Counted from the stretch's first letter, positions 2,216-64,000 are shown. The stretch is 64,000 nt of DNA from Diadema antillarum (GCF_040938485.1 NW_027271819.1:496001-560000); one strand, 5' to 3'. The notes: generated by a model not told the origin, from the letters alone. Numbers and translations are program-made.

Positions 2216-2218
2216 ATG
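2216..2218 (+). CDS. NAT: NAT copy 1 start-codon exon (coding part is ATG only)
   Basis: CAGCAAAATG|GTGAGC donor. Phase 0 matches the acceptor at 3052-3053. The same arrangement precedes every paralog. Confidence 0.65.
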
Positions 2219-3053
2219 GTGAGCAAATCCTCTGTGCAGAGTTGCTAAATCATTTAGAAAAAGAATTTTTTTCTTCATCATAAAATGTTGGTCTATTGAA
2301 AAGGGTGGCAGAGTTTGAACTTTTCTTTTCGAATAGGAAATAAGTTTAGAGTATTAGCGAAAGTAAGTGGATAGACCTGTAATGATCTCCAATATTTTGT
2401 CTAATCACCAGCAACTTGGTGTAGTAGTGAAAATTTGTATAAAGGTCGGCGTTTGTGGAAAAATCCTCAGTTTCTTTCCTTCCGTTTTTATTTTGCTGTT
2501 TCTGGTTGTTTCTGTTTCTCCATATAATCATTATCTGCTAATATGATATGATACGTAGAGGAAAATTTTCATGACAATACCTTGCGAGCCATTTTCAAAA
2601 TGTAGAAAAATATAGCGAAAGATATAGGCATTCTTAAATTGATTGAGTTATCCTATACTCCCACTTCCTACTTCCAACTCCTTCAAGATAAACACATGAT
2701 CTAAGCCTGCGAATTCTCTGATTTCAATATTAATCACCTCTAAACGCTCACAAACGACATTGCAAAAATCATTGTGTTGTTCCAGAATCACAATAAGTTT
2801 AATAGCAGTTTAAACAATCTTGATAGGACCTTTTCGATTATTTTTTTTTCGCCTTTTCTTTGAATCTTATATGTCGCCTGTAATTGTATGCGATTATCAT
2901 GATTGTGAAACTTTTAATGCACTACTTCATCGGAAACATGCAGGCTGGACGTTGGAGGGAAAATGCACAGGTAACACTGCTCTTTTGACAAAGGTCCCTT
3001 AGATGAGACATTAAAAGAGCCATGTCTGATATTCACAAAATTATATCTTACAG

Positions 3054-3995
3054 GGAGGGCCAAGTGATACAAGCGAGGACCTGACAATTGAAACTTTGAT
3101 GACGTCAGAAGAAGGTTTTCGATTCGTACGCGATGTTCTAGGTGTGGCGTCACCTGAAGACAAGATTGTCTCTGACCCAAAAGGACTACTAAACAATATT
3201 GTGTGTCACTGGCGTCAAGTCATCCCATACCAGACAATTCATAGTGTAGCCACGCCCAACAAAGACAGGCGTCGCCCTACACTCTTGGAGATCAAGAACG
3301 ATATATGGGCAAAATATGGTGGTCTCTGCTACCACAATAATGTGGGATGGTACATGATGATAAAAGCTCTTGGTTACCAGGCAACCCTGGTGCCAGGTGA
3401 CGTCCTTGAGACCAAAAGCTGTCACGTGATCATCATGGTATTCAATCTATCTGGAGAAGGCAGCAAGCACATGTTGGATGTAGGAACAGGAAACTTTCCG
3501 ACATTCCAGCTGATCCCGCTGGATTTTGAGAGGGAATCTCCCGAGTACCACGAGTCTTTCTTGCGCTACAAATTACTACGACAAGGAGACGTCATCTTAC
3601 GCCTCCACAACGCGGAAAGCGACCCGGTGGGATCGGCTTGTTTCGAGAAAACCTTGCAGGACGGATGGTACACTTATGTGGAGATTCATCATGAAATGCC
3701 CGTAAAGGTCTCTTATTTTGATGACGTAATGTCGATGTTATTTACCGAGATATCTGAGGAGAACCCACTTCTAAGTAATGTGTGGTGAATATTCTTTCCT
3801 AACCGCCGGCTCCTTTCGATCAGGAACACCACTCTCTTGATAGAGAATGAGAATGGGCAGGTGGAAAAATCGTAATTCCTGTCACGTGAAGAGATGATCG
3901 AAACGTTTTCTCGCTTCTTTCCTCAGTTCAGTGAAGAAGTGTTGAATGCCGCTATGGATGATGAGAACATCAAACTGGACTTCAACAGGAAGTAG
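3054..3995 (+). pseudogene. NAT: Arylamine N-acetyltransferase copy 1, probable pseudogene or null allele
   Basis: NAT motifs IPYQTI, GGLC, H and LDVG are intact. In-frame TGA at 3786-3788 (Cys in paralogs) and TAA at 3873-3875 (Tyr in paralogs). The frame then continues to the family C-terminus AAMDDENIKLDFNRK* at 3995. Acceptor TCTTACAG at 3053. Confidence 0.85.
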
Positions 3996-4940
3996 CCTGC
4001 CAGTTTCTTTGACGATTTAAATTAACTAAAATTGACGTCAGTTAGACCACCAAACTTCACCCTGCCAAAGAAAAAAAAATTTCAGATTCCAATGACTAAA
4101 TCCACAAATAATTGTCAGTTTGGAGCCCGTGAAACATATCAAATTATCAGCGATTCATTAAGAACGTATCCGTTCTTCGACTTTTAAAAGATTGTTGAAA
4201 GTGTAAATAAAAACAGTCCTCGAGTGCAACATGGAGCTACTCCGTGAACTGTATAAAAAATAGACTTGTTCCTCCAACACACGTTACTCCGGCTTTGTCA
4301 GTATATCTTGCAGAACGTTTGATCACTATATATTGTGTAGGTACCCTACATTTTGAATAAATGTACGTTTTATATACTTACTACATGTTCATTGTAAATT
4401 AGCATCATCTGAATTTGTAAATGTAGATCTATATTTGAACCTTTAAGATTTATTTCAGCGCGAGGAGAGTTGTTACCGTTCTAAAATTTGTAGTCAATTT
4501 TGTTTGCAAATTATATCCTTATATCATACAAGTTACCTAGTTGTAAGGTGTTTATATTCCTGTCCCTGTGAGACGGGCAGAGGTATCGATAAATCAATTT
4601 CATATCAATCAATAACACTGAGAAATCGTACATTGGTTCCAAGATAATGACAGAATTGACGTGGTAACAGGCTGTATCAGTGATTTGCCCATGATCTCTT
4701 AAATTCTATTTAGCCGGCCCTAATCATCATGATTCAAACCGAAAGAAAAGGCACAGTATACTTGTAATATATAGTTCTTCAAACACACACACACACAAAA
4801 TAATATAGAGACAAAATGACTATGTTTCCACGTAATTTGTATTTGAGGAGTATACATTCTTTTTCGGGTCACCAATAATGTTCACATTTATAGGTTGTTG
4901 TTTTTCTGACCAAAACTTGGCAGCAGAGATAAAAAAGGGG

Positions 4941-5560
4941 ATTCATTCATTCATTCATTCATTCATTCATTCATTCATTCATTTTATTTAATCAGGGTAC
5001 TAACATCAGCTACGGCTGTTTTTCAGTTAGTCTGTGCAATACAAACAAGTATACATGACATGATACATTGTCACAGATGCAAAGCAAATGAAAAATACAT
5101 AACACTACACAAATCAATTTACATAATTATCATAGGCAAGACACAAAAATAGGGAATACTATCGATTTACAAGAAATAGAATTGCATTTACATTAAAACT
5201 TAAAAACAAATATCTTAAAATAAGTAATTGATAACAAACAGTGAGATAAAACACAAAATTACTAAAATATACACAAAAAACACTTAAAACTGGTAGATAA
5301 CAGATTACTGTAAAACGAACACTGCACACCCCCTCTAACTATCCTAACCTGCGCGTACACACACACACACACACACACATCCACAACCCCCCCACCCCGA
5401 CCCTATATATATCTTTGAAACAAACTCTAATAACAAAATAAAGCATACAATTTAAAATATCATCTGAACAATACAAATTTCTTTGCTCTTACTTAAAGCC
5501 CAAACAAAGTTCTGGTAGGCCTGCAAAAGTTGTCAAATTTCGCTCCCAAATGTGAACGTA
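4941..5560 (-). mobile_element. Probable LINE (CR1/L2-type) 3' end with (TGAA)n tail
   Basis: The minus strand reads ...AATAAAAATGAATGAATGAA...; (TTCA)n array at about 4941-4984 next to an AATAAA signal. Only a weak GAKF-like coding remnant near 5500-5560. Confidence 0.4.
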
Positions 5561-6602
5561 TGCTTGGGAAATGTGCAGGATAACGATGTTATTACAAGAT
5601 ATTCGATGGGTAACGACGAAAATGCGAAATATTAACCAAAAAGGTTCAGTCTCAGAACTTACCCGAACGGGGTCAGGCTAAACTCGGACTTAGGGATAAC
5701 TCGGCTTCGCTTTGACGGCGGGATGAGTTATAATGGTTGTCCCTCTGATTGTACAGTGTTGTCCTATGGGAGCCGCCTGTATAAACTAGCGCTTCGTGTT
5801 CTGGCTTCTCGCAGTAATGGTCCGAGTTGCTACAACGCGCGCATCCAAAACCTCTTTTGCGCGCAAGCAAAATTAGTGTGCGCCTATCAAGCACCTCTAA
5901 AACAATCAAAGGCCCTTGATAAACAACAACAAAAACTCCAAAGACCGCGCGTCTCAGCAACTGAGGACCGCGCGCTGTCATTTTTGTTTCAAGTGTTTTG
6001 TACAGGATTACGTTAGCACGCACTTTCCTGTCCATTCAGTTAGGCCTCATTTGGTACTTTGCAGTGGCCAGTAGAATGTGGCGGTCACTTACTGCGTGTG
6101 AATTGTCTGAAGTAGGGTCGAATTTTTCCCGAGACCGAGTTAGTCTGGAGCCTTCTGGAATAAAAGTCGGTTTTCCTACTATTATTATTTTTCTCAAAAT
6201 ACTCCAAATCGACTCATCATTCCGGCAAACCGCGTCAGCCAGGTAAGTTTCTTCGTGGACTCTTTCGATATATTGCAAGTAAAAATGAAATGGTGCTAGA
6301 CGGGTTCTCCAGCACTTACCGAAACTTAGTTTTCACTTTAAACAATTTCATCATCATTTGAAAGCTACTGGTTCTATGGCAAGCCGAATTCTCGCTGTTT
6401 TCGGTATCTCTGAGAGTGAAAAATGATAACATTTTGAAAATTGCAAGGGTTGACAAACAGATCCTATATCATAATGGATTGTCATTCTATTACAAAAACA
6501 ATGACCTTTCCAATAGTATGCAAAGTAATTGACATATTTGTAACAATATTGCTGAAACTACAGATCTTAGGGGTTCCGTTCTTTCTGGGCCCCCTGTTAT
6601 AT

Positions 6603-6915
6603 ATATATGGGTCATGACACGAGAAAAGGGCCCTTAGCACCGCTGCGCGCAAACGCCAGAAAACCGCGCGGAAGTTTGACAAAGCAATACGCGCAAAAAA
6701 AAGATCAACTGGCTATAACTACGCGCACACGCAAAGACGTATCAAAAAGTGACATAATTTGGGCAAAACATGCCTTTTTTAATGTCGTAATGGGGTCATT
6801 TAGGATTGGAAATTCAGAAAAAGATTTGAATATCTAAATGCGTCAGAGTTTCTTCTACAATGTGGAGGTAAAACCTCATTTTCGGTATTTAATGCCGTAA
6901 GGGCCCTTTTCTCGC
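6603..6915. mobile_element. Inverted-repeat MITE truncated by the assembly gap
   Basis: CGAGAAAAGGGCCCTTA at about 6620 is mirrored by TAAGGGCCCTTTTCTCG at about 6897-6914, immediately before the N-run. Confidence 0.35.
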
Positions 6916-7093
6916 NNNNNNNNNNNNNNNNNNNNNNNNNNNNNNNNNNNNNNNNNNNNNNNNNNNNNNNNNNNNNNNNNNNNNNNNNNNNNNNNNNNNN
7001 NNNNNNNNNNNNNNNNNNNNNNNNNNNNNNNNNNNNNNNNNNNNNNNNNNNNNNNNNNNNNNNNNNNNNNNNNNNNNNNNNNNNNNNNNNNNN
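6916..7093. other. Assembly gap (178 N)
   Basis: Run of N bases. The ORF 6876-7310 that spans it is an artefact. Confidence 1.
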
Positions 7094-7329
7094 ACAGTAT
7101 CACTTTTGGTCGGAGCGTTGCTGTTTGGAGTGCTGCCTCTTCAGAGTTTAACATGAATAGGGGACAATGGAAACCACATCGCTGCTCCTGTTTGCTGGTA
7201 GAAATCGTCTCTCCATGTGCAAAAGGTGGTATTGAGGCACATCTCAAGAAAAAAATGGATCTTTCACGGAGACAGTTTGGTCCAGTCTGGTACAGTTCCG
7301 TTAGATTCAAGTCCCTTTAGGAGGGTCTA

Positions 7330-7530
7330 GGGCAATTACCCCCTGGGCAATTACCCCGCACCCTTCCCCTTGCCTTAATCCTAATCCTAATCCTGAACCT
7401 AATCCTAACCCTAACCCAAACTCTTAACCCTAAACCTAACCCTAACCCTAATCTTTACTCTAAACTTACCACTAACTAGTATTTAGCCCGGGGGTAATTG
7501 CCTAGCTCTGGGGGTAATTGCCCGGATACG
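7330..7530. mobile_element. Small MITE with doubled GGCAATTACCCC inverted repeats and a telomere-like (CCCTAA)n core
   Basis: GGCAATTACCCC twice on the left and GGGGGTAATTGCC twice on the right, with degenerate CCTAAT/CCCTAA repeats at about 7375-7455. Confidence 0.5.
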
Positions 7531-7559
7531 CTTTACGATGGTACCGCATGCATCCTTAA

Positions 7560-7870
7560 AGGCCCTGTTTACCTTTGGGAGCAGTGATTTTTGAAAATGT
7601 TCAAGATATCCCATTTGATGCATATGTGTAGGTCTGTTGTATCACTAAACTCCCTACCATACAGTGCCATATACATTTTTTGCAATAAAGCCTAAAATAT
7701 AAGGACATATCAGTATTTTTCTCATTAAACCATAACAGTTACTGTAGACGGTTTAGTCGAGAAACATTTTTATTAAAAAAAAATGTACACATTTTGTATA
7801 TTTATCAATACCTTACGTGCATTATACTGGTTCAAAATTTTACATTAGTTGTTTCTATCCTGAAGTCACA
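7560..7870. mobile_element. Left arm of a TTAA-type (Kolobok-like) MITE, truncated
   Basis: TTAA|AGGCCCTGTTTACC start, the same terminal style as the 45222-45789 element. No right end found. Confidence 0.35.
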
Positions 7871-7934
7871 TTTTAGAACTATTTTGAAGCACTAAAGCTT
7901 TGTTTTTGTTTCATCTGTAAATGGTAAATTATGC

Positions 7935-8480
7935 CTTTAACTGGTACATTCCTGCATAGCGATTCAACATCAAAACTGACGAGGAGATCATAACCAGAGA
8001 CCGACATTTGACAGACCTTGTCAATGAATTGTTTGGAATTCTTCACGTAATGTACATTTTGGATATCAAGGGGCTGTAGGATAGCAGCCAGATGTTGGGC
8101 CAGGGCGTAGGTGGCAGAGCCCCTGGTTGAAATGATATGTCTGAGTGGAATAGCCGGTTGTGGATCTTTGGTGCCCACAGAGTATCGGGCACATGCCCGT
8201 TGAGATGCGTAGTTTTCAGAGAGGGTTGGAGACAAAGCGTCTTTCCGCTGTAGGGAGAGGAGCTTGTCATTCACCCTTCGTTCGAGAGCTGGTGTAGGGT
8301 CTCTGGGTAGTTTCTTGTAGGTGTCGGTATCCAGCATTAATGAATCTTGGTCTCATAATCCTCTTTCTCCATCATCAAAGCTGCATTCCCCTTGTGTGCT
8401 TTGAGGATGTGGATGGAATTATCCTCTCTTAAAACAGGAGATGCTTGATTTCTCGGCTTTAGCGAGGTTAGGCAGAGTGC
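7935..8480 (-). mobile_element. Penelope-like retroelement reverse transcriptase fragment (degenerate)
   Basis: Translation ILKAHKGNAALMMEKEDY...DTYKKLPRDPT...PLRHIISTRGSATYALAQHLAAILQPL...KNSKQF...SFDVESL..NVPV matches the Penelope-like RT N-terminal pattern (ADKGN, DPT, PLRPIIS, SFDVxSLFTNVP). Contains stops. Confidence 0.8.
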
Positions 8481-9389
8481 CTGCACTGACACCGACACTT
8501 TAACCTCTAATATTTTATACCTCTTACATTCTTTTTTTTTTGTGTGTGGAATTTTTGCTTCTTACATTATCACCTGTGACATATTCACTTGGACATATAC
8601 ACATTTAACATTATTAGGCCTACGTATACCTTTTTTTTTTTATTTGACTTTATCATTTCTAAAATCTATAGTATACGCAGGTCTGAATCTGCTCGGTGAA
8701 CGAAAGAAAAACAAACAAACATACAAACAAACAAACAAACAAAACAGCGTATCAGAAAATAAAACCCGCTTTTGGTGTCTGGCCACAAGAATGCTTCTCC
8801 AATTGCTTTGGTGCATACGACCCTGGTTATATTGCACAACGGACTCCGTTGCAACGAAATCCTCGGGTCCGGCAGTTTTCTTTCGATATATCAAAGATTT
8901 TGTTATAATCCAACAAAATAAATAGTAAAAAACATACAGCGATACTGACACGACTAATGAGGCATGAAGTTAATTTGTTGTAACCGAAGTTTTGCTATAA
9001 CCGTGTTTGTTATAATTGGAGAGTACTGTAACAATATGACCTATCCTTTTGGCATGGCTATAGTTATCCTGTCATCGAAGCAGAAAAAAAAAAAACTTTT
9101 GTCAAAGTCACTGAGGTGGCAAGTATTTAAAGCTTAGTAACAAGTTTCATCTATTTTCTCACCTTCTTATGTATCTTTGTGCTCTGCGTTGCATTCATCC
9201 ATTAACCTTTCTCTCCACTCCGTTCACCGTCCTTGTCCGTAAAGGTCTTGGGACAACGAGCACGGTATAAGCATCAGTACAGTGTTCAAAGAAGCATGTC
9301 TGGTTCTGCTACAATGTCACTTCCCCTCTAATAATTTCGCTACAAAATAGATATTCATCTGGTGATTTTGGTGAGCGTAATAAACGTCA

Positions 9390-9660
9390 GGGCCACAACT
9401 ATCGAAGTAGGCCTATGTAGTAACTTCAGCTTGACGAACGAACCATGCACTGAAAGCTGACTTGTCAACAAGGGTCGTCTAAAAATTGCAGTTACAATTG
9501 ACATGGAACTCTTCAGCAAAATGGTGTGCAAATCCTTTCTTCAGAGTTATAACAGTTTGTAAAATAGATTATGATGAACTATTCATCTATCTGAATAATA
9601 GACTATTTGATTTTGAATTTATCTTTCCGAACAGGCGGTTTCTCTCCAAAAAAGTCATTG
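9390..9660 (+). pseudogene. Orphan NAT first-exon paralog with no adjacent coding exon
   Basis: Aligns to 2100-2330 and 21825-22080. CAGCAAAATG|GTGTGC with ATG at 9521-9523. No NAT coding exon seen between 9.7 and 22.9 kb. Confidence 0.7.
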
Positions 9661-9923
9661 AAATTTTTGAAAATCATGTGCAACAAATCATACGAGGCTA
9701 TATTGCCCTATAGTTTTTAAACATTTCAGAAAAAAATTGTTTGTGTGCATGGCTTTCATGATATTCATGAATTAATTAGATAATGATTATCATTACCACC
9801 TGAGTAATGACCAATTATCTGCATAGTACTTTATTTGTCTATAACTGTGACACGACATTAATTTTTTTTTCTTGTGACAATTTCCCCAATTTAATTTTCT
9901 CCAAGGATTCCAGGTTAGGGTTA

Positions 9924-11884
9924 GTGTCCGATCAAGTATTTGTTATTTTATGAAATAATGTACGTGACATGAACTAAACATGTGCAAAATATAGGGGTGA
10001 TAGGGGCTGTTTTTCTTGATTTATTGCAAAGAAAGTTGCAGAAAGAAAGAAATATCTCAATACATCGAAGATAAGCTTTAATTTCAACCAAGTTTTTTTA
10101 CGTGATCCCGACATTGTTGCATAAACAAAGGCAAATATACGATAGCCCAAAGTCTCAGCTACGACATATTAAAATCTGGGAGAAATTCACTGAAGGGTAA
10201 GTGAGCTAGTGCTCGATAAAGACAATCATGTCAATTTTCACATCTAGAAAAATTCCCTCCCATGGAGATAACACGTCATTACGAGGATAGAGAAAAAACG
10301 TCCATATGACCTTTGACCCCACTTTGCACAGACAAGATGGCATCTGAGCAAAAAGTGATTATTTTGTAAAATGATTCTTGCAACATGGTCTTTGCGCGTG
10401 CAAAATATGGGAAAGATAGGACAATGTATTCACCAAGATACAGGACAAAAACATTTATGACCTTTGAGCCTAATTTACATACCCAAGATGGTGTCTGATC
10501 AAGTAGTTGTTATCTTATGAAATAATGTACGTGACATGAACTAAACATGTGCAAAATATTGGGCTGATAGAGCTTGTTTTTCTTGAGTTATTGCAAAGAA
10601 AGTTGCAAAAAGAAATGAATATGAAAATACAGCGAAGATAAGCTTTAATTTCAACCACGTTTCGGGACATAATCCCGACACCGTACGAAAAAAGTGAAGT
10701 TCATGTAACGATAGCTCAATGTCTCAGCTACAACATATAAAAATCTGAAAGAAATTCACCGAAGCATAAGTGAGCTAGTGCTCGATAAAGACAGTCATGC
10801 CAATTTTCATTTCCAGAAAAACTGCACTCCCATAGAAATAACACGTAAACTGGTCAAATTTGACAAGATTACTTCCAATCAGTTTTTACGAGGTGATGCC
10901 GTTATCCAATCAAAATGTTGTTATACATTAATGAAAGAAAATTTAATAAGCTACAACATACTGAAATCTGGGTGAAAATTGGGAAAGGATAAGTGAGATA
11001 CGCTCGAGTGAACTTGAAATTTGATGACGTCATTTTGAAAATTTACTTTTTTTATTTTATTAAGAAATTCTATATCTTTTAATCATTTTTCCAGCATCGC
11101 CGCCCCATGAAATGACATGTACAACTCAACAGCTTTCAGACTATGTAAAGAAAATGGGGTCACCGTCCATCCTGACGAGTAAAATCGGATTAAAATTGAC
11201 GGTTTTTTTTTGCATTGTTGCACTGTATATCGCCACTGACGCGCGCGTGGAATTTCAACTTTGACGGGCCTGTATGACGTCATATTGAGTCGGATTACCT
11301 TGAAACATGGTAGAAATATTCCTTGACATTTCAGGCATCCAATAAGTGTGAAAAACGAAAAATTTCTATTCCATATGAGCTGTGCGTGTGTATGTGTGCG
11401 CGCGCGTACGTGTCCGTCCATTTTTTCAATTTTTCAAAAAAAAAACTCCAAATGGTCTAAAACGCGTGCAAAAAAAATTGAGCTCGATTTGAGCATACAA
11501 ATATATCAACAGGCGCGTACGCGCACATTTTAAGAGAAAATATTAATTTTGAGAATATCAGTAGAATGCGCATAAGTTCAAATATATGTGACGTGAATTT
11601 CATTGAAAAATTCCATTCCATTAATGAGATATGATTGAGAATGTGTTTTCATATAATGACGTTATAGTGACGTCAAGGTCGACTGATCACTATGATACAT
11701 TAGATCTGTCGTCTTTGGGACATGATACATAATAATTATGGTAGGATTTTGAAATTGATAGCAAGAGGACTTTCTGAGCTAATTGATACACAACTTTTGT
11801 CCAGAAATAAAGAAGAAGAAGAACCACCAACAAAGAATCAGTACAGATACAGAAGGTGATCCGAGAGGATACTCGGATCACATA
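9924..11884 (-). mobile_element. Helentron-associated (HINE/DINE-1-like) element, copy A, 3'-truncated
   Basis: Direct repeat of about 16269-18257. Terminal hairpin GTGATCCGAG-AGGATA-CTCGGATCAC at 11856-11881, adjacent (GAA)n, and an internal tandem unit of about 567 bp (9924, 10491). Confidence 0.6.
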
Positions 11885-12289
11885 ATGAAGAGATTATCAG
11901 ATTAACCTGATATTACGCATGGTTTACTAAGACATTCTGTCCATAATCAATGTCAATTTTCTTAGCAGTAGCATTATCTCTTGAAAAGTGAGTTGAGCTA
12001 AAAATGAAGAGTATGCAAAGGACTTCAAGTAATGAATAGAGGCATGCCTGCTGAAAACACACTTTCCCATCCATGTTATAATTCCAAACATAAGAATTAC
12101 AATGAGGAAGGATGGGACTTTTCAAAATATGAAAAACCCAAGACTTGATCGGGCCACCCATTTCCCCTCCCCCTTTTTTTTTTAGTCCTCACATGAAATT
12201 ACGGGGTGCGACTTTTTGTTGGTTTTGTGATGCACGGTCACATATCATAATCAACTTGAATTGTATAATCAGGGGTTTGTATATGTATA

Positions 12290-12292
<3 letters not shown>

Positions 12293-12332
<40 letters not shown>
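12293..12332. repeat. (AT)20 microsatellite
   Basis: Direct inspection. Confidence 0.95.
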
Positions 12333-12334
<2 letters not shown>

Positions 12335-18257: not shown

Positions 18258-18339
18258 AAAATGAATTATGACAATTGATTTAAGCAGTACTTAACCTGTC
18301 CTATACTCCTACAGTATTACCTACTAAGTGTGAGTGCTG

Positions 18340-19592: not shown

Positions 19593-19636
<44 letters not shown>

Positions 19637-41311: not shown

Positions 41312-41345
<34 letters not shown>

Positions 41346-51516: not shown

Positions 51517-51547
<31 letters not shown>

Positions 51548-53204
51548 ACACAGCTACACTCGCATAATCACACTCAATATTCTAAGTTCCAGGCCCGAAC
51601 AATCATTCTCGTAAGGAACTTTTGACATGAGTTATAGGTTTAAATGATGATACTTTACTCAAAGTTATCAACCTACAGAAAATATTAGAACATAATTTTG
51701 CGAGATTAATAACATTTTTACAACTACTTCAAATCAAATTTGTTAGGCCTATTTGTTAATCATGGGCATGTCAGTCATATACTGCGAACCACATCGCCGC
51801 AGACCTGATGAATAACTTAAGCTTTAACTCACTAGAATTCCCAACTACAAAGCAGGAATTCTAATCATTAGGATTACATTCTACCTCCTCTACCGGAAAG
51901 AACACAGTATCCCACAGTGTGTTCAAATAGTCGATTATGTGAAAACGCTCGAATCAACAGTGTAAAGATGATTTCACAATGTGGTGTGCTTTTCACAGAG
52001 TGTTCACATAGTAATGCTTTGTTTCACACTGTGAATTGACGACTCACATTGTGTTCAATGCTCGAATTTGACAGTGTGATAAGATTTCACAGTATTTTCA
52101 CACTGTGTTCACACTGTGACTCTCACACTATATGTGGGACACTGTGTTATTTCCAGAAGGGTCTCTTCAACATTTTACTTTTTCTGCAATTGGTTATACT
52201 GTACCGTATGTGCCCCCACAAAAAAGGAAATAAAAAGAATACAACATGACCCCCGGCATCGATAACTTTAAAAATGGTGAATCAATCTAAATTTCAGGGT
52301 ATGAAAGAATAAGTTATTTCCCACATTTTACAGAAAACTCCATCCGATTTGCTTCAGTGGTCGAAGAGAAATGAGGATTATTGTAGAACATGTCAGGAAT
52401 CCCTTAATTCCCTCCAAGCTCTGCCCAGTCTTTTCACACATAAATATGGAGTATGAGAGCATCCAAGTGAATAACATGAAAGAAACAGACCCAGTGATTT
52501 AAAAGTGACTAACAAAAGACATTGCGAGGGAACATGCAAGTTATGCTGAGTCGAGGTGAAAATGCATTCCAATGTCTTTTGTGAAACATTTCAGTACTTT
52601 AGCAATGAATGACAGATGATGTCATCTGAGGAATATTGATTTGGAAGGATTTTTTTGTGGGCGTTCCCAAGTAATCTGCATAACAATAGAAGACAAAAAA
52701 GTGGAATGTTTCTAGATATTCGTTTCACCTCAAAAGTGATGTTAAGGGTATCATAAATCAACACAAATCAGCATGCATTAAGATTTCAGGGGCCCTTACC
52801 ATGCTTACAGAGGAAGTGGGAGAAAAATACCCATCCTTCCACGCCTTTGCTGCGCATGATCCTGGACCCTCTTCCAAACCCGCACTGACTGGGCTTACAG
52901 CATTTATCCTGTCGCCGATGCGGCAAAGAACATTCTGGATCTCTATATGCGCTATTATACACATTCAAACTTGAGTCAACCTTTCGCATGCTGACTCTTG
53001 TGGCATTGTGTTCTTTACTGTATTCATTTACCATCCATGTCCGTGAAACACATTGCTGTTACCCACGTTTCACTGAAGTGCCTCCATTTCCAGGGTACTG
53101 TCTTTATTGATAAGAGCTCAACGACAAACTACTGGAGACTGTCGGTAACGGTCGATTTATGAGATCAAAAGGCTGATTGAAGGGAGTAGAACTTTCCATG
53201 AGAA

Positions 53205-53207
53205 ATG
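53205..53207 (+). CDS. NAT: NAT copy 6 start-codon exon; coding exon expected just beyond the window
   Basis: GAGAAATG|GTGAGT. The downstream intron is colinear with the copy 5 intron up to the window end (64000 corresponds to 46325). Confidence 0.6.
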
Positions 53208-55902: not shown

Positions 55903-55975
55903 ACTTCGGTGGTCTAGTGGTTATGACGCTGGTCTAGTAATCCAGAGGTCGTGGGTTCGAATCCTGCTTGGGCTG
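55903..55975 (+). pseudogene. tRNA-like sequence (Thr-AGT-like anticodon loop); tRNA pseudogene or SINE head
   Basis: A-box TGGTCTAGTGG, anticodon loop CTAGTAA, B-box GGTTCGAATCC, and an oligo-T tract at about 55983. Acceptor and T stems pair poorly. Confidence 0.6.
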
Positions 55976-56789
55976 CCTGTGATTTTTTTTTTTCACAGCA
56001 GCCTACAAACTGCACACTGCAGTTGCGTGCGTTACTACGGATGGAGACAAATGAATAATCTATTATTTTAATATACAATGTTTGACATCCTTATTGCAAT
56101 CACTTTCTTTAATTGTAAATTTAGAGACATAATGAATTATTATTAAAAGAAATCATATTTCTGTATTTTGTTGTGAGTTTGCATGGGAACATACACGTAT
56201 CATAATTTACAATTTTAGTTAAATAAAGAACATCTTATAACAGAACTGTCTAGTGATGGTTGAATAATTATGTCAATTTGTTATAAGTCCTATCAGTTAC
56301 ATGGAGTGCATGTTCCCATGTTTATAAGAATCATACGTGACACATTCAAAGTGGGTTGAAGACAACAAAATAATAAATAAAAGAATAAAGGAGAATAGAA
56401 CTTAATCTGATTACAGCATCATCTAAATATTGCCAATGTGCACTTAGAAATCTATCAAGATTTATCACAAGGTTATGATTACCACACAAAACCTTCAAGA
56501 TTTATTATCATGAAATACATACCAATGAACACTTAAAAAAATCTAACATTCCATATCCACATGAAGCTTTCCTTGATATAAATGTCTCTCTGTAGTGTTA
56601 TTAAAGTGTAGCAAAATTGTAATTACGACATCACAGAATGGAATGCATTGTTTTCACCTTCAATCTTAGGATCTCCTTTCATGTTTCCACTTTACAATCA
56701 CATTTCACTATAGATATACCGTCCTTATGTTGTCGCCCTTCATCCCAATTTCTCCCTTCTATCCTATCTGTAGATTGTCTTCTTTCCTA

Positions 56790-57895
56790 AGCCATTGTAT
56801 TCACATTCCTTGATGATCAGCACGATGCTGTACTTTTTTCTTCTTCTCTGAAACAGTCCAGCTCTTCGCTACTGCATGGCATCAGTCATCTGAAAGAAAA
56901 GACAGAAATTAAGAACTTTCGATTAAAATCAAACATCATGATACAAGATACAACTGTCATTTTGAGAAAAAGAAATCAGCCAACTAAACTGTAGTTGAAA
57001 TTATTTTGCTCTATTTATATTAAACATAAAACAAAACGGTATACAGGATCAAAGAATGTCAAAAAAATACTGCTGTTCGTCTTTGATGCATATTCAAATT
57101 GTCTCGCCTTTTACATATTTTAATGATGCAAGATCTTATGTCTAGCACTTAGTAAGTCTCATGTAGAATTTAAATTATTATTCACATGAATAAATCTACA
57201 TGTCCTTGTAAACAAGGCATTGCTTTGAAAAAGCTGAATATTACTAACTGCATTTGGGAAACAGTCTACGACAATCAAACTTGTTTATTATCAGAGACTT
57301 TAACATCTTAATTAGACCTAGACTCTACATTACCATTGTATTCACATCCGTTGGTGATGTACACGACCCTGTACTTTTCCTTTTCTTTTCTGAGACAGTC
57401 CAGTTCTTCGCTACTACATGGCACCAGTCATCTGAAAGAAAAGAAAGAAATTAAGAACTTTTGATTAAAATCAAACATCATGGTACAAGATACAACTTTA
57501 ATTTTGAGAAGAAAAAAAAAATCAGCCAACAAAACTGAAGTTGAAATTATTTTGCTCTATTTATATTAAACATAAAACAAAATGGTAGGCCTATGCAGGA
57601 TCAAAGAATGTCAAAAAATGCTGCTGTTCGTATTTGATGCATATTCAAATTGTCTCGTCATTTACACATTTTACTGATGCAAGATATTATGTTTAGCACT
57701 TAGTAAGTCTCATGTAGAAATTGAATTATCATTCACATGAATATAAATCTACATGTATTTGTAAACACGGCATTGCATTGAAATAGCTGAATATAACTAC
57801 ATGTACCTGCATTTGGGAAACAGTCTATGACAATCAAACCTGTTTCTTATCAGAGACTGTAACATCTTAATTAGACCTAGACTCTACATTATCAT
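56790..57895. repeat. Diverged tandem duplication of about 550 bp inside the Sola1-like element
   Basis: AGTCATCTGAAAGAAAAG at 56884 and 57426; GACTCTACAT at 57321 and 57880. Confidence 0.85.
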
Positions 57896-60277
57896 TCAGC
57901 TTTTAAAGGTATTAACCATTCACCTATAAAACACTGGCATTGTCATGTGCATCATATTTCTTTGATACTGCACATATTTTCATGAAGTCTGTGCAAGAAT
58001 GCAAATGAAACACGTCTGCTGTTTGGTATTTATGAAAAAAAAAATATCACTAACCCGGAAGTCCTTGGCCTTAGGAATAACACGTGGCGAGTTAGTAGGA
58101 ATTGACGTTAAAATAGAATAAGAATAGATCTACTAAATAGGCCTTTGCCTCATGAATGTCTGGTCTAATTATAGACTAAGTGAAGTCTAGACCTTTCACT
58201 TTTAAGTTACCAGTGGCACACAGAATTTATATTATAGATCTAGACTACATCTAGATCTAGACATCTAATACTATTAGATCTTGGCAACTTTTGTCTTTGT
58301 GACACGAAATTAACACGTCACGGATGATATTGCGGCGATATCCAACAGGATGACAGTACCACTATTACTGAATCAGTAAGTTGACATAGATAACTAACAT
58401 CAACTTGTTAACGTACGTTAGAGATGGCACCATTATACAATAACCGGTGACACTGACACTGACAGATCTAACGACTACGTTTAGACTAACGTTAAAGAGT
58501 TAGACTCGCCATCTCAGTAAGTCGGCCAAAGACAAAGTCAATACAGGGCTAAGTCAGTGTTACTGTTATGTTAGGCCTAACAAACGTTAACGGTTGCTCG
58601 GTTAGGTTAGGTTTACCAGGACTCAAGAGTCCTGGTTAAATCAGTCGAGGGACATTTCTTAGAAGTCCTTCGATTCCAAGAATAAAAAGGGTGAAAGAAC
58701 AAAGGGAAAAAAGGAAAGAAGAAAGGACAAAAGATTATGTATGGCTGCTGTGGAAATCGACAGCGCTACTGTATCACTATCAATCACGCGTAAATATGTA
58801 AACGCCATTTGGTTGGGCCGCATTCACAAGTTTTAGGGAAAAAAAGCCCCACCGCTGTGCTTCAAAGGTACTCCACTCGAACTAACGTTAGACATAATGT
58901 CACATATCTACACACAGTACGGTACTAGGGCTGAATTCACAAGTATACTAACACTGCACTGTACAGGAAAGCCACCTAACCTGTAAACTACTCGTAGTGT
59001 TTAGGTAGTATCACTAGACCACATACTGTCATAGATGACATCTACACCAACGCTGCACACTGGCACTGGTCCGACGGTCCCTGACCAGGAAAAATCACTG
59101 TTGGACACTGACCAGTAACTTTTTCAGGAATGGACCAGTAAAAATTTGGGGAAAAAATGGGTGGACTCTACCTACTATTACCACTAGTCTAGATGTAGAT
59201 CTAGAGCTAGACTATAGACTCTGTGTTAATTTGACTTGGTCTTAGACTTCAGCTGATCTTAGTTTTAGTAACTGGTATTACAAGTAAAGTCTTAACTTAG
59301 ACTTAATAGTTAAACTTGAAAGTTAAAGTCTAACATGTCTAACTTTATTCTTTACTCTTCCTTTGAGTTTTACTTTTAGACTTTTTACTTTTTGTTTAGT
59401 TCAGTAGGCCTACTTAGTCAATCTCATGATTTCATTTTCAACTCAAGTCAAGGCATAGCCATGAGTGTCTTCGAGACTTTGACATCTTGCATGTCTTGCA
59501 CACAGACGTTACGACTACAGTACTCAGTAGTCTCAGAAGTAACGACATAAGTTGAAAAGAAACTATAAATAATATGATTTGGGATCTAATTTGAAATTGG
59601 ATGGCGTTTACAGACTAAGCTTCATAAGCATCACGCGATTGAATACATGGGACTACACTCTACCGCAATTAATGGTTATGGTAGTCCAACTGAAACTGTT
59701 ATTTTGAGCATGATTTTAATAGGATTATAGCTTACCATTCACTTCACTCGTGGACAGTGGGCTGGCTTAGGTCGTCATTCATCTTTCAGAAGGTTTGGTT
59801 CTCACTCTGAGATCTGGATTAGGGCCAAAACCTAATTCTAGGCCAGTAAGTTGAACAAAGCTCAAAATAATGCAACTGCGACGGTTCGTAAAACCCGCAT
59901 TGCTCTTCACCCTAGCAATTCGGGTTTCACGAACCGGCGTATCTTTCCTGCGTCGGTTCGTGAAACCCCTTTTTCTCAATTTCTCGATATTTCGAGTACC
60001 GTCGTTTTTTTCTTTCTTTGATAAAATTAAGACTAATTAATTTTGTGATCTAAAATTTGGGGATTTGGTAGAGTTTTGAAAGCACTTTCATTTGGTACCA
60101 ATATCTCGATTTTGAAAATTTTGACCAAAATCGAAATAGCGTCGGTTCGTGAAAACACCGACGAAATGAGTCTATGGAGATGTCTTTTAAAATTCAAATG
60201 AGTTGTTATTGTCTTAATAGGGCCTATTCCTTTCTTGTTTAGATAACATCTTGGTATCTGCAAATTGAAATCAGGTA

Positions 60278-61119
60278 GGGGAGAGCGGGGTGAGTTGGGA
60301 CGCGGGTCAAGTGGGACACGTCCTCTGAATCAAAAACTGTTCAACCAATCAGCGATTGGCTAATATCTACAATAAGTCCCTAGCAACCATACATCACATT
60401 AAGAAAGCCATGCAGTTCGGCAAATTCTAAGTGTGCATAAATTGCTATTGAAAATTTTCCCCCAAATATGATTTTTTTTTTTTTAAATCAGGTTAATTAA
60501 CCTGTTGTCTTTGTATTCATGATTTCAAGGGCACAATTGAAGCTGGTGGTGAGCCTTATTGATATGCAACTAATATAACTTGTTTTTGACAAATGCCTGC
60601 ATGGTTACTGAGCAGTTGTACATATCTATGTATATGCCATGTGAGGGACAGTTGGGACAACGTGTCCCATTTGTCCCTCATAATAGCATTACATGTAAAA
60701 CAGTTCAGATTTTCAAACATGTTGTTCAAACTTGTTTTGTTGAAATAAAGATCATTTTAAAGCATGTTTGACTGTTTTCATTACCAATGTTTCATTACGC
60801 CTTCAAACTTTGACTTTTCCGACATGTTTATAGGATGTCACACTTTACCCCACTTTACCAACACCGTCCCATTTCTCCCTTGCCGTTGTCCCACTTTACC
60901 CACGGGTGGGTCAACTTCTCCCCCAAAATAAGGTTTTTTCTTTTCATTAACTGCAGAAAATTGAGAACAGTGCCACCCCCAGTTTATAGCTCTTTATGTA
61001 ACCTACCGTATGAACCTTCATGCAAGCCCGCAAGGAAATGTAATCATCTCTTTTATAAAAAGATATCAGAAGAAAATCGGCGAACTTGAAATAATGTCCC
61101 ACTTCTCCCCGCTCTCCCC
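60278..61119. mobile_element. 842-bp MITE with TA target duplication (probably Tc1/mariner superfamily)
   Basis: TIR GGGGAGAGCGGGG...TGGGAC / GTCCCA...CCCCGCTCTCCCC, TA at 60276-77 and 61120-21. Empty site CAGGTACGTC at about 43128. Confidence 0.8.
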
Positions 61120-61352
61120 TACGTCAGTGAATAATAATGAAGTCCTATTTACCCAGGGTAGACTCTTCAGTGTTGCCACTGCTCTCCCAGAGGGCCCTGC
61201 CATTGTTATTACCCTAGCGTTGCCAGGCACCCATTTATACACCTGGGTCGAGAGGGACATGGTGGGTTAAAACACCTTGTCCAAGGAAGTAAGCGCTGGG
61301 CTTGATTCGAACGGTCGAATTCGGGTCCGCAGGTCGGGAGTCGGGAGTCTCA

Positions 61353-62441
61353 AGGGGCGATCACACATTGCCGGTTTAGATGGCGGTTCATGGCGGTTCT
61401 CAAACCGCCATGAACCGTGTCTCAACGATGGCGGAAAGCACTTGAACGCAATGTAACTACGTTCTCAACACGTTTTGAACACGGCGCTAACGCGGATTCG
61501 CGCGTTAGTAAGACGGATCTCCCCGAAGGGTGGAGGAGTCCATACCAAGCCCTTGTAGTTGGATGCAATCTGAGCCCTTTCACTCGTCTTCAGTGGGTTA
61601 CTAAGGAGGTATTGCTTTGTTAGGTACAAAAAGATAATTTCAAAAGAAATTGAGAAGAATTGAAACACCCTGTATATTTACAGATTGACATAAGTGATGC
61701 AATAAGCAATTGTGTTTTTTTTTTCAAGTTTCAACATCGCTTTTCCCTCTAGTCTCTTAAGTTTCAACATGTCTGTATCAACATGTACTCTTACAAAAAG
61801 GCATACATAATCTCGAAAGCAGAACCCAACATATTTACATAAGTCTTCCGTGTATAACTTACAGGTTCACGTAGCTGGCCATCTTTTAAGCTATCAAGCT
61901 TTAACAAAGTTATGCACACGGCTTTTAAAGTAACTGATGTACTTTTCAACAAACCTACTAACTTTTTGAATATCAAATTTTCTGTTTTACTCTATGTGTT
62001 AAAATAAAAGAGTGATAAAACTTTAGCATTCAATACAATATTTACCCGATCTAGCATTACGGGTTTATCTTTGCTTTTTTCCCCATTTTTTTATTGCTCC
62101 TCAACGAAGTGTCGCAGGAGGCATTATTCTCTTTTAAGTTCAACATTTGATTTTGCATGAAAAGTTATGGCGGTGTTGACACGGTATTTTCATGGATCTT
62201 GCGGTGCAAACACGGAGGAGCCGATCTTTACACGGTGGAAGGCGTTTAGAACACGGTCCATTTCAAACCGCCAAGACCGCCACGAAAAATTAAACATGTT
62301 TAATTTTTCTGGCGGTTCTCCGCGGTTCCCAGGGTTTATGGCGGATGAGTGACGGATGACCACGGTTTGTGTACGGTGTGAACACGGCTTTTCCGAACCG
62401 CCATGAACCGCCATTTAAACCGGCGATGTGTGATCGCACCT
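61353..62441. mobile_element. Second copy of the Harbinger-like element (1089 bp) inside the split SINE 61155-62482
   Basis: Same TIRs and same TCA/TTA flanks as 43365-44759. 306 bp shorter owing to an internal deletion between AAGTTTCAACAT repeats. Confidence 0.8.
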
Positions 62442-62899
62442 TTACCCACTATGCCACTATGCCACTACGCCACCGCGCCCCCGGGTACAGAGAAATATTA
62501 GAAGTAGTAAGAAGCAAAAGAAACGGAGGGACCTGCTTAAAAAAAAAAAAATACAAAAGCATATTTGAACTTTGTACTATGTTGTTCTGTTATTTACCCA
62601 GCGGAACAATTGTGTTTTAAACCTTTGATCAGCTACAGACTAAAGGTCAACGATTATGAATATGTTGATACGTTCAGACTTATCATATGCGTCACAATGA
62701 CTTATACATGCAAATTAGTTCAGTTGATAGTTCTTTGCATATCTTCGTTCCATCAGCACACAAATATCTATTTTTTTTCTTTTGTAACATGGAAATGAAA
62801 CCCCACATCATAATCTCTTCTTTCATGTCAATCATGAAGAGATGTAGTCGCTGCAGAGCTGCGATAAATAACCCGACGGCGATTTCTAGAGGTGGTTAA

Positions 62900-63467
62900 A
62901 GGACAAGTTCACCTTCATAAACATAAGGATTGAGAGAATGTAGCAATATTAGTAGAACACATCATTGAAAGTTTGAGGAAAATCGGACAATCCGTTCAAA
63001 AGTTATGAATTTTTGAAGTTTTTGTGCAGTAACCGCTGGATGAGAAGACTACTGCAGTGTGTGAATAACTTAGATGTCACATGCGTACAACAATATAAGG
63101 AAAATATAAAGAGAATTTCACAAAATTTCATCTTTTGAAAAAAGTACACATTCCCCCGACTCGTTACCGACAAATGTTATGGGTAATATTATTCCCCCTG
63201 CCTTTAGAAAGAGGCAAGTAAAGTGCTCTTTTATTATGCGCAAAAAGTGAAAATATGTTGAATTTTCTTTACATTTTCTTTATGCTGTTGTACGCATATG
63301 ACTCACAAGCTGTAGTAGTCTCCTCATCCAGCGGTTCCAACACAAAAATTTTAAAAGTTCATAACTTTTGCATCGATTGTCCAATTTTCTTCAAACTTTC
63401 ACTGATGTGTTCTACTAATATTGTTGCATTCTCTCAATCCTTATGTTTATGAAGGTGAACTTGTCCT
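62900..63467. mobile_element. Second copy of the 568-bp Kolobok-like MITE
   Basis: TTAA TSD (62896-99 / 63468-71), same site as 45222-45789. Confidence 0.85.
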
Positions 63468-64000
63468 TTAATTGTGCCCTCATCTGTAAATCTCAACCCA
63501 GTATCTCTTCAGAAATATTGATACGTTTGCAGCATTGTCCATTGTAAGGTCACAAAATGATAGCCTCAACTATTAATAAAATCCGTCCCATGATCAGTCA
63601 ATGCAATTTCAGAAAAATAAAAGAGCTGTACGTGAATTTCTCGGTATCTGGCCCAGGTAGGCTGGGTGAAATATTAATGCACTGATCAAACATTCGGGGA
63701 AAATTCCTCAAAGTAAGAGAAAAAAGTCTCCTTTGCGGCAATGATATGACATTGTCATCTGAAACTTCACCAAGGAATCTTGATAGTGAGTATATACATT
63801 GGCTGGAATGTTAGAAATGTAAAGGCATACCATCATTCATTCAATTATAAATGTTCATTAATGATGTAGGTTAATGTAGAGGACTGAAGTCTCGAGACAA
63901 CTATCTAAAACAGTATATATTGTATAATCTTAGTGAAAGGTCACAGTTCAAGATCAGAGGTCACTGCACCTAGGTGACAAGGTCATTTTTGCGATGTCGT

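What the first reader, a model, noticed from the sequence alone, without database searches (positions are those of the whole stretch)
2216..64000. Lineage-specific tandem expansion of a divergent arylamine N-acetyltransferase family (at least 6 copies, 7 first exons)
Seen: five same-strand NAT coding exons (four intact, one with two stops), a sixth gene running off the window, and an orphan first exon, all sharing the invariant tail AAMDDENIKLDFNRK. Two subgroups are evident (copies 1-2 and copies 3-6). Known: NATs use a Cys-His-Asp triad to acetylate arylamines and hydrazines, and vertebrates typically carry only a few copies. Inference: an actively expanding detoxification or natural-product acetylation array in a marine invertebrate, probably uncharacterised.
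Basis: partly seen in the sequence, partly recalled or inferred. Interest (0 to 1): 0.7.

Follow-up and report, generated by a model that had tools for sequence, protein, structure and literature searches.

The report
Sea urchin NAT-like acetyltransferase gene array

Summary
The window (Diadema antillarum, contig C931:496001-560000) carries five same-strand NAT-like coding exons: four intact, plus c1 with two in-frame stops. A sixth intact gene starts 511 bp past the window end. There is an orphan first exon and a 79-codon C-terminal fragment.

All copies pass Pfam PF00797. They keep Cys87-His119-Asp137. The predicted structure (pLDDT 95) matches only NAT-family structures.

The window is a slice of an array of about 15 loci spanning about 250 kb. 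The uncollapsed assembly holds about 44 intact single-exon copies, roughly half that per haplotype.

The subfamily itself is old. Named members were found in four of the five echinoderm classes, a hemichordate and a horseshoe crab. The clade holding the window copies is Diadema-only (100% support). Most duplications predate the D. antillarum / D. setosum split.

Paralogs are under purifying selection (dN/dS 0.1-0.3).

The two assembled haplotypes differ. One lacks a 21.9-kb segment holding c2. It also has one c5-type gene where the other has three, with switch points inside the coding exon. This indicates unequal crossing-over.

No RNA evidence was obtained, and substrate and function are inferred. 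I class this as an ordinary kind of system (birth-and-death NAT array) at unusual scale, in an uncharacterised invertebrate NAT clade.

The parts
2040..2218 (+). c1 first exon (5' boundary approximate). It ends in the start codon ATG 2216-2218, followed by the donor GTGAGC.
   Evidence: Exact 13-mer CAGCAAAATGGTG at 2209-2221. The region is conserved with the upstream regions of c2 and the orphan exon. No RNA evidence.
3054..3995 (+). c1 coding exon, a pseudogene. It has in-frame TGA at 3786-3788 and TAA at 3873-3875, and no frameshift.
   Evidence: PF00797 E=7e-8 on the first 230 aa. The allele on the other haplotig also carries a TGA.
5089..27026 (.). A 21.9-kb segment present on this haplotig (C931) and absent from the other (C863). 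It holds the N run, the orphan first exon, repeats and c2.
   Evidence: Haplotig alignment. The junction is clean and lies in contiguous sequence on both sides. c2 has no allele above 86% identity anywhere in the assembly.
6916..7093 (.). Run of 178 N (assembly gap or masked stretch). It is intergenic with respect to the NAT genes.
   Evidence: No NAT homology on either flank. Not filled, and continuity is untested.
9388..9523 (+). Orphan first exon (5' boundary approximate), with ATG at 9521-9523 and donor GTG. No coding exon follows it.
21760..21950 (+). c2 first exon (5' boundary approximate). It ends in ATG 21948-21950.
22903..23844 (+). c2 coding exon, intact. It has a long branch and a Gly-to-Trp change four residues after the catalytic Asp. 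It is hemizygous in this assembly.
   Evidence: (PF00797 E=5.9e-10).
29259..30221 (+). c3 coding exon, intact (first in-frame ATG at 29322). It is a 1:1 orthologue of the D. setosum protein P0004.
   Evidence: Its first exon was not located.
36774..36961 (+). c4 candidate non-coding first exon (5' boundary approximate), with the donor ...GGCCCAG|GTAGGC.
   Evidence: The 22-mer is exact at three sites, against 0 expected by chance. It is conserved among c4, c5 and c6. Inferred, with no RNA evidence.
37553..38524 (+). c4 coding exon, intact (ATG at 37598; 308 aa). This is the protein that was modelled and searched.
   Evidence: It is identical in protein to its allele on C863.
45790..45977 (+). 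c5 candidate non-coding first exon (5' boundary approximate).
46789..47757 (+). c5 coding exon, intact (ATG at 46831). It is a mosaic: c5-type up to about nt 800, then 99-100% c4-type through the 3' flank.
48490..48726 (+). C-terminal fragment of 79 codons. It is part of a 973-bp tandem duplicate that is 100% identical (47519-48491 = 48491-49463) and is not an independent gene.
   Evidence: Whether the duplicate is real or an assembly error is unresolved (one search was uninformative).
50424..64000 (+). Duplication unit C, about 96.6% identical to unit B (40223-50500) and interrupted by an insertion of about 8 kb at 53238-61120. It leads to gene c6.
63468..63655 (+). c6 candidate first exon (5' boundary approximate). 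The c6 coding exon lies just beyond the window, at window-equivalent 64511-65434.

Best explanation
The window is a slice of a large same-strand tandem array of two-exon genes in Diadema antillarum. The genes encode cytosolic-type enzymes of about 300 aa with the arylamine N-acetyltransferase (NAT, PF00797) fold.

Shown:
- The proteins pass the NAT family model, keep the Cys-His-Asp triad and are predicted to adopt the three-domain NAT fold.
- The copies belong to a Diadema-only clade within an old, uncharacterised NAT-like subfamily found in echinoderms, a hemichordate and a chelicerate.
- Paralogs are under purifying selection. One copy is a pseudogene.
- The two assembled haplotypes differ in gene content, with breakpoints inside the coding exon or at clean junctions.

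Inferred:
- The enzymes work by the NAT ping-pong mechanism. An acyl group moves from acyl-CoA to the catalytic Cys and then to an amine or hydrazine acceptor.
- The array evolves by birth and death through unequal crossing-over and gene conversion.
- The many paralogs widen substrate range for dietary or environmental amines, or for endogenous ones.
For: Family and fold:
- PF00797 scores 38-40 bits against a cut-off of 22.8 for all four intact copies.
- A profile of the subfamily hits only NAT-family chains in the PDB, down to E=4.6e-17, including human NAT1 at 2.9e-11.
- The AlphaFold model has pLDDT 95 and pTM 0.92.
- The top 40 Foldseek matches are all NAT-family chains, with query TM-scores of 0.54-0.72. 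The next hit has E=0.04.
- Cys87 is invariant, and His119 is invariant in A1 and over 90% in A5. Asp137 is over 90% conserved in A1. The three residues align with the catalytic residues of B. anthracis NAT C.

Array:
- There are five coding exons in the window, and 12 full-length plus 3-4 broken loci between 329 and 578 kb of the contig.

Lineage:
- Only Diadema proteins exceed 42% identity.
- The Diadema-only clade has 100% support, and S. purpuratus groups elsewhere.
- D. setosum orthologues have consecutive accession numbers, which suggests a syntenic array.

Selection:
- dN/dS is 0.09-0.33 in all 15 pairs with non-zero dN. dS between paralogs is 0.06-0.6, against 0.010-0.015 between alleles.

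Turnover:
- C863 lacks window 5089-27026 at a clean junction, and has one c5-type gene where C931 has three.
- c5 and its allele switch donor type at about nt 800 of the coding exon.
Against: - No expression evidence was obtained. The runs found were DNA contigs, plus one doubtful RNA run that covers only repeats.
- Identity to any characterised NAT is only 12-18%.
- The Arg of the canonical R-G-G-x-C motif is replaced, by Tyr in these copies.
- NAT-fold enzymes with other chemistry exist and match about as well. Examples are the malonyltransferase 7qi3, the amide synthase GdmF and the N-acyltransferase 8k51. So neither acetyl-CoA nor arylamine substrates are established.
- The assembly retains both haplotypes and has about 11x coverage. 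Some structural differences could therefore be assembly errors, above all the 973-bp perfect duplicate.
Confidence: 0.8

Rival explanations
1. The copy number is largely an assembly artefact. The published D. antillarum v0.4 assembly retains both haplotypes, so alleles may have been laid side by side or joined across the N run and counted as paralogs.
For: - The assembly is 1.75 Gb against a haploid estimate of about 0.7-0.9 Gb, and 84% of BUSCO genes are duplicated.
- Contig C863 mirrors this contig.
- The 973-bp duplicate is 100% identical.
- An N run lies inside the segment that the other haplotig lacks.
Against: - Copies on this one contig differ by dS 0.06-0.6, against 0.010-0.015 for true allele pairs c3/c3h and c4/c4h.
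- The flanks of c1 and c2 are only 70-76% identical.
- D. setosum, an independent chromosome-level assembly, has separate orthologues of several subclades.
- Both breakpoints of the 21.9-kb indel lie in contiguous sequence away from the N run.
- The artefact reading can at most remove the fragment at 48490-48726 and perhaps one of c5-c7.
Confidence: 0.07
2. The genes are NAT-fold enzymes with a different chemistry. They may use another acyl-CoA (malonyl, propionyl or longer), or act as amide synthases on endogenous metabolites such as pigments or signalling amines. On this reading they are not xenobiotic arylamine acetylation enzymes.
For: - Foldseek matches malonyl-, acyl- and amide-forming NAT homologues about as well as classical NATs.
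- Identity to characterised NATs is very low, and the motif Arg is lost.
- The subfamily is conserved across echinoderms, a hemichordate and a horseshoe crab, which suggests an old endogenous role.
Against: - The large, polymorphic, lineage-specific tandem expansion with pseudogenes is the pattern typical of environmental-response families. It matches vertebrate xenobiotic NATs (PMC3601968).
- Nothing in the sequence specifies the acyl donor.
Confidence: 0.3
3. The array is mostly a decaying relic. The open frames persist by chance or recent duplication, and few or none of the copies are functional.
For: - c1 has two stops, and its allele also has one.
- Further broken copies lie at 432 kb and 483 kb of the contig.
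- c2 has a long branch, a Gly-to-Trp change next to the catalytic Asp, and is absent from one haplotype.
- No RNA evidence was obtained.
Against: - dN/dS is 0.09-0.33 across pairs that diverge by up to dS 0.6.
- The triad is kept in every intact copy.
- Open frames of about 300 codons are kept in 11 of about 15 loci on this contig, and in the D. setosum orthologues.
Confidence: 0.05

Closest known systems
Vertebrate xenobiotic arylamine N-acetyltransferases (NAT1/NAT2 and paralogs; Pfam PF00797)
   Same: - Same Pfam family, the same Cys-His-Asp triad and a predicted three-domain fold.
- The protein is about 300 aa and is encoded essentially on one exon, with a small upstream exon.
- Copies sit in tandem clusters that evolve by birth and death, with pseudogenes and lineage-specific duplications (PMC3601968).
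   Different: - Only 12-15% identical to human NAT1/2 in the structural alignment.
- The Arg of the R-G-G-x-C motif is replaced.
- In c1, c2 and the orphan exon, the start codon is the last three bases of exon 1.
- About 15 loci lie in one array, and roughly 20 or more intact copies per haploid genome. Vertebrates have 1-2, rarely up to 5.
Bacillus NAT homologues: (BACAN)NAT C (3lnb), (BACCR)NAT3 (4dmo), YvcN-like
   Same: They are the best sequence-profile matches among solved structures (E=1e-15 to 5e-17) and align over nearly the whole length, including the triad. NCBI named one Diadema paralog 'acetyltransferase YvcN-like'.
   Different: Identity is about 16%. The Diadema genes are animal genes with introns and animal orthologues, so nothing points to recent transfer. 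One relative of unknown taxon (P0017) has Glu at the Asp position, as does B. cereus NAT3.
Uncharacterised NAT-like proteins of other echinoderms, Saccoglossus and Tachypleus (UniProt auto-name 'arylamine N-acetyltransferase')
   Same: They belong to the same subfamily, with profile E-values of 1e-113 to 1e-57 for the named examples, similar length and architecture, and several paralogs per species.
   Different: They are 27-43% identical to the window copies. The clade containing the window copies has no member outside Diadema in the databases searched.

Membership tests
Arylamine N-acetyltransferase family (Pfam PF00797, Acetyltransf_2) | Score above the curated Pfam gathering threshold over most of the domain | tested here: met
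   c2-c5 score 38.0-39.8 bits against a cut-off of 22.8 and cover up to profile positions 5-231 of 240. The first 230 aa of c1 score 33 bits.
Arylamine N-acetyltransferase family (Pfam PF00797, Acetyltransf_2) | Catalytic Cys in the G-G-x-C motif | tested here: met
   Cys87 (c4 numbering) is invariant in 38 subfamily sequences. It aligns with the catalytic Cys of 3lnb, 4dmo and 2bsz.
Arylamine N-acetyltransferase family (Pfam PF00797, Acetyltransf_2) | Catalytic His and Asp completing the Cys-His-Asp triad | tested here: met
   His119 is invariant, and Asp137 is at least 90% conserved, in the 19-sequence alignment. Both align with the His and Asp of 3lnb.
Arylamine N-acetyltransferase family (Pfam PF00797, Acetyltransf_2) | Three-domain NAT fold | tested here: met
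   The AlphaFold model has pLDDT 95. All Foldseek matches with E<=1e-9 are NAT-family structures, with query TM-scores of 0.54-0.72. The next match has E=0.04.
Arylamine N-acetyltransferase family (Pfam PF00797, Acetyltransf_2) | Conserved Arg preceding G-G-x-C (partner of a conserved Glu in canonical NATs) | tested here: not met
   The window copies read K-Y-G-G-R-C where 3lnb has K-R-G-G-L-C. The subfamily consensus also lacks Arg at this position. The Glu partner was not examined. This is a feature of canonical NATs, not a Pfam membership criterion.
Arylamine N-acetyltransferase family (Pfam PF00797, Acetyltransf_2) | Acetyl-CoA-dependent N-acetylation of arylamines or hydrazines | not testable with these tools
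   This needs recombinant protein and enzyme assays.
Tandem gene family evolving by birth and death | Same-strand tandem paralogs with graded divergence and pseudogenes | tested here: met
   Seven consecutive + strand genes, c1 to c7, have dS 0.06-0.6. c1 is a pseudogene, and further broken copies lie on the contig.
Tandem gene family evolving by birth and death | Lineage-specific clades rather than 1:1 orthology across distant taxa | tested here: met
   The Diadema-only clade has 100% support, and S. purpuratus groups with another subfamily. Caveat: no other diadematoid or cidaroid genome was available in the searched collections, as far as could be seen.
Tandem gene family evolving by birth and death | Ongoing copy-number change by unequal recombination | tested here: inconclusive
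   The two haplotigs differ by 7 against 4 genes over the same interval, with a clean junction and intragenic switch points. The assembly has low coverage and no spanning reads could be examined.

The most novel reading that the evidence does not exclude
The Diadema-specific NAT-like clade comprises roughly 20 or more genes and includes presence/absence and 1-versus-3 copy polymorphisms segregating within one individual. It may be a rapidly diversifying, previously undescribed branch of animal phase-II metabolism, with substrates unlike those of classical NATs, for example algal or cyanobacterial amines in the diet of this keystone grazer, or endogenous aminated pigments. Copy-number variation could then underlie individual differences in chemical tolerance.
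Probability: 0.2. Interest if true: 0.6.

Novelty: new member of a known kind. Interest (0 to 1): 0.4.

Why it matters
NATs are textbook drug- and carcinogen-metabolising enzymes. They have been studied almost only in vertebrates and microbes, where copy numbers are small.

This locus shows that an uncharacterised invertebrate branch of the family can expand to dozens of genes in one genus, stay under purifying selection, and vary in gene content between the two chromosomes of a single animal.

It offers a tractable case for asking what NAT-fold enzymes do in marine invertebrates. It also adds a candidate family to the echinoderm 'chemical defensome' of an ecologically important reef herbivore.

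It is a practical warning as well. Gene-family counts from the uncollapsed D. antillarum assembly must be roughly halved and checked locus by locus.

Tried and rejected
- RNA evidence. Laid on 45500-49800, these covered the genes only with short DNA contigs. The RNA-labelled run covered only high-copy repeats. There is therefore no evidence on transcription, splicing, or the 973-bp duplicate.
- First exon of c3. No homology to the c4-c6 or c1/c2 first exons was found in 27026-29258.
- Pfam scans of six ORFs between c1 and c2 gave nothing. Two of them looked like retroelement remnants by eye, but that is not supported by a tool result.
- A relaxed tblastn (E up to 50) found no degraded NAT exon after the orphan first exon or elsewhere.
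- Another Cys-His-Asp fold was considered and rejected. No non-NAT structure scores better than E=0.04.
- Recent horizontal origin from bacteria was considered and rejected, because of introns, animal-wide relatives and echinoderm phylogeny.
- The more distant two-exon subfamily on contigs C16 and C1823 gave no PDB hit and mostly no Pfam hit on its large exon alone. It was not pursued.
- The third large protein search was not used. The first two already addressed the absence of close relatives outside Diadema.
- Spliced models were not joined.
- The N run was not filled or looked up.


Full report
**What is in the window**

The ORF list and a tblastn of the window with the copy at 37598-38521 find five full-length matches on the + strand, plus one 79-codon C-terminal fragment. 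I name the copies c1 to c5.
- c1 spans 3054-3995, c2 22903-23844, c3 29259-30221, c4 37553-38524 and c5 46789-47757.
- c1 has two in-frame stops, TGA at 3786-3788 and TAA at 3873-3875, and no frameshift. The other four are open.
- Each coding exon is preceded by a conserved acceptor (TCTTACAG|G or TCTTCCAG|G). Each starts in phase 0 and is open from the acceptor.
- All five end with AAMDDENIKLDFNRK followed by TAG.

**The N run**

The only N run is 6916-7093. It lies 2.9 kb downstream of c1 and 2.4 kb upstream of the orphan first exon. No NAT-like sequence lies on either flank, even at E=50. It therefore interrupts no recognisable exon.

Continuity across it could not be tested, and I did not fill it. 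An 'ORF' listed at 6876-7310 on the minus strand merely runs through the N letters.

**First exons**

The exact 13-mer CAGCAAAATG|GTG occurs upstream of c1 (2209-2221), upstream of c2 (21941-21953) and at 9514-9526. All three share flanking homology. In these three, the start codon forms the last three bases of exon 1.

NCBI gene models of Diadema paralogs that begin 'M|GEPSES...' have the same structure. The copy at 9514-9526 has no coding exon behind it, so it is a genuine orphan.

Upstream of c4, c5 and the gene leaving the window, a different conserved block ends in CTCGGTATCTGGCCCAG|GTAGG. It matches at 36946-36967, 45962-45983 and 63640-63661, three exact matches where none is expected by chance. 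In phase 0 this block carries a stop and no later ATG, so it would be non-coding. NCBI's D. antillarum models of this type start at the internal MTKDV.

No first exon could be found for c3. Six of the seven claimed first exons are therefore supported, by sequence conservation only.

**What the proteins are**
- All four intact copies pass Pfam PF00797 at 38-40 bits against a cut-off of 22.8.
- A single-sequence search of solved structures is weak. The best hit is B. anthracis NAT C at E=6e-4.
- A profile of 38 subfamily members hits only NAT-family chains, 22 distinct sequences in all. The best are 4.6e-17 and 1.2e-15 for the two Bacillus NATs. Human NAT1 scores 2.9e-11 and human NAT2 1.6e-8.
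- An AlphaFold model of c4 built on that alignment has mean pLDDT 95 and pTM 0.92.
- The top 40 Foldseek matches in the PDB are all NAT-family structures: classical NATs, the Fusarium malonyltransferase, a Streptomyces N-acyltransferase and the GdmF amide synthase. E-values run from 4e-14 to 1e-9, query TM-scores 0.54-0.72 and identity 12-18%. The next match has E=0.04.
- Cys87 is invariant, His119 is invariant or nearly so, and Asp137 is at least 90% conserved. The three residues align with the catalytic residues of 3lnb.

One canonical feature is missing. The Arg before G-G-x-C is Tyr here. This agrees in part with another first-stage note on this window (s1-217920).

**Whose genome, and the haplotype problem**

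The closest proteins are annotated in Diadema antillarum and D. setosum. The assembly statistics (1,754,659,819 bases, 2,963 contigs) match the D. antillarum hifiasm v0.4 assembly. Its authors later showed that this assembly retains both haplotypes, with 84% of BUSCO genes duplicated (PMC13511894).

Contig C863 is the reverse-oriented second haplotype of this region. Genome-wide counts must therefore be roughly halved. Paralogs on the same contig are not alleles:
- dS between window copies is 0.06-0.6.
- dS between the allele pairs c3/c3h and c4/c4h is 0.010-0.015.

**Extent of the family**

A six-frame search of the assembly gives 119 matches. On this contig, NAT-like loci run from 329 kb to 578 kb: 11 intact full-length copies, the c1 pseudogene and 3-4 broken copies. 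Just beyond the window lie c6 (560511), c7 (568123) and c8 (577362).

By my count of near-full-length matches without stops, the assembly holds about 44 intact single-exon copies, so about 22-25 per haplotype. A more distant two-exon subfamily, with about 30 matches on C16 and C1823, comes in addition.

Vertebrates mostly have one or two NAT genes and at most five functional ones (PMC3601968).

**Is the expansion lineage-specific?**

A profile search of 1.84 billion representative proteins finds 591 relatives at E<=1e-3 and 144 at E<=1e-30. Named examples come from:
- the sea urchin S. purpuratus;
- the sea stars Acanthaster and Asterias;
- the sea cucumbers Holothuria and Apostichopus;
- the crinoid Anneissia;
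- the hemichordate Saccoglossus;
- the horseshoe crab Tachypleus.

All are 'uncharacterized' or auto-named. The subfamily is therefore old.

The word-based search of 5.8 billion proteins finds nothing outside Diadema above 42% identity. In the tree, all window copies fall in a Diadema-only clade with 100% support. Its sister is another Diadema cluster (C748/C124). The S. purpuratus proteins group with a third Diadema subfamily on C578/C134.

Within the clade, D. setosum has orthologues of c3 (P0004), the c5 type (P0201), c8 (P0217) and the c0/c1 type (P0213, P0214), among others. Their accession numbers are consecutive, on one 31.8-Mb scaffold.

The expansion is thus specific to the Diadema lineage as sampled, but it mostly predates the split of the two species.

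**Selection**

Pairwise Nei-Gojobori dN/dS is 0.09-0.33 for every pair with non-zero dN, including pairs with dS of 0.3-0.6. This indicates purifying selection on most copies.

c2 has the longest terminal branch (0.17) and a Gly-to-Trp change four residues after the catalytic Asp.

**Turnover between haplotypes**
- C863 aligns to window 1641-5088 and then jumps directly to 27026. The junction is clean and lies in contiguous sequence on both sides, away from the N run. That haplotype therefore lacks 21.9 kb holding the orphan exon, repeats and c2.
- c2 has no allele anywhere in the assembly. Its nearest DNA relative is 86% identical. Since c2 is an old paralog, deletion on C863 is the simpler reading.
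- Further on, C863 has one c5-type gene where this contig has c5, c6 and c7.
- Sliding identities show that c5 is c5-type for about 800 nt, then 99-100% c4-type through 730 bp of 3' flank. Its allele on C863 switches at the same place to the c7-type 3' end and flank.
- Unit B (40223-50500) and unit C (50424-64000) are 96.6% identical, apart from an insertion of about 8 kb.

These mosaics are what unequal crossing-over between misaligned paralogs produces.

The 973-bp perfect tandem duplicate (47519-48491 = 48491-49463) creates the C-terminal fragment. It may be very recent or an assembly error, and the contigs laid could not decide.

**Mechanism and function**

It is shown that these are NAT-fold proteins with an intact triad under selection.

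It is inferred that they use the NAT ping-pong mechanism: acyl-CoA acylates the Cys, and the acyl group then passes to an amine or hydrazine. The acyl donor and the acceptor are unknown, because NAT-fold enzymes with malonyl, longer acyl and amide-synthase chemistry match equally well.

The pattern of a large, polymorphic, lineage-specific tandem family resembles other environmental-response families and vertebrate NATs. This favours a role in handling dietary or environmental amines, but that remains a hypothesis.

No expression evidence was obtained.

**Literature**

Full-text searches found no description of NAT expansions in echinoderms. The two D. antillarum genome papers do not mention acetyltransferases. 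One vertebrate study mentions three invertebrate NAT sequences that cluster with atypical fish and lizard NATs (PMC3601968).

**Verdict**

The interpretation needs the corrections given above. This is a known kind of system at unusual scale, in an uncharacterised clade, and of moderate interest.

Noticed in passing
window 47519-49463: A 973-bp tandem duplication that is 100% identical (47519-48491 = 48491-49463). It covers the last 79 codons of c5 plus the 3' flank. The perfect identity suggests either a very recent event or an assembly artefact.
   Followed up: partly
window 27405-27949, 45218-45793, 62896-63471: A palindromic element of about 570 bp (self-complementary, MITE-like) is inserted upstream of c3, c5 and c6 but not c4. 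Logan contig depth over 45500-45930 is in the 10^5 range, so it is a very high-copy repeat.
   Followed up: partly
window 21000-21650: A block of about 650 bp is 93-96% identical to at least 30 other contigs of the assembly. It appears to be a young, high-copy interspersed repeat just upstream of c2.
   Followed up: no
window 53238-61120: An insertion of about 8 kb in duplication unit C relative to unit B. It has no ORF of 90 aa or more on either strand and an internal 545-bp tandem pair (56792-57337 / 57333-57896, 88%). Its nature is unknown.
   Followed up: partly
window 38728-39393 / 39583-40222 and 48932-50423: The 3' flank of c4 and of the fragment forms large inverted repeats (83-88%). 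These contain a 117-bp tandem repeat (39975-40188, 50176-50389). The region 47960-48395 has back-joins in DNA contigs, as if it were tandemly arrayed elsewhere in the genome.
   Followed up: no
window 23300-23330 (c2, residues after the catalytic Asp): c2 reads DVGTWGFPTF where most paralogs read DVGTGGWPTF. c0 and c1 read DVGTGNFPTF. This loop follows the catalytic Asp and differs systematically between the two subgroups.
   Followed up: no
G000 contigs C16, C1823, C15, C286, C1289: About 30 further matches at 27-34% identity are split over at least two exons. This is a more distant NAT-like subfamily, also tandemly arrayed. Its large exon alone mostly fails Pfam and gives no PDB hit.
   Followed up: partly
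protein P0017 (Logan contig, taxon unknown): This relative has Glu in place of the catalytic Asp (LVEVGCG). That is the Cys-His-Glu variant described for Bacillus cereus NAT3 (PDB 4dmo).
   Followed up: no
window 37553-37597, 46789-46830, 29259-29321: In c3, c4 and c5 the frame is open from the splice acceptor to the internal ATG (14-21 codons). The D. setosum c5-type model P0201 translates through this stretch from an upstream coding exon. The true start codon of the c3-c6 type is therefore unresolved.
   Followed up: partly
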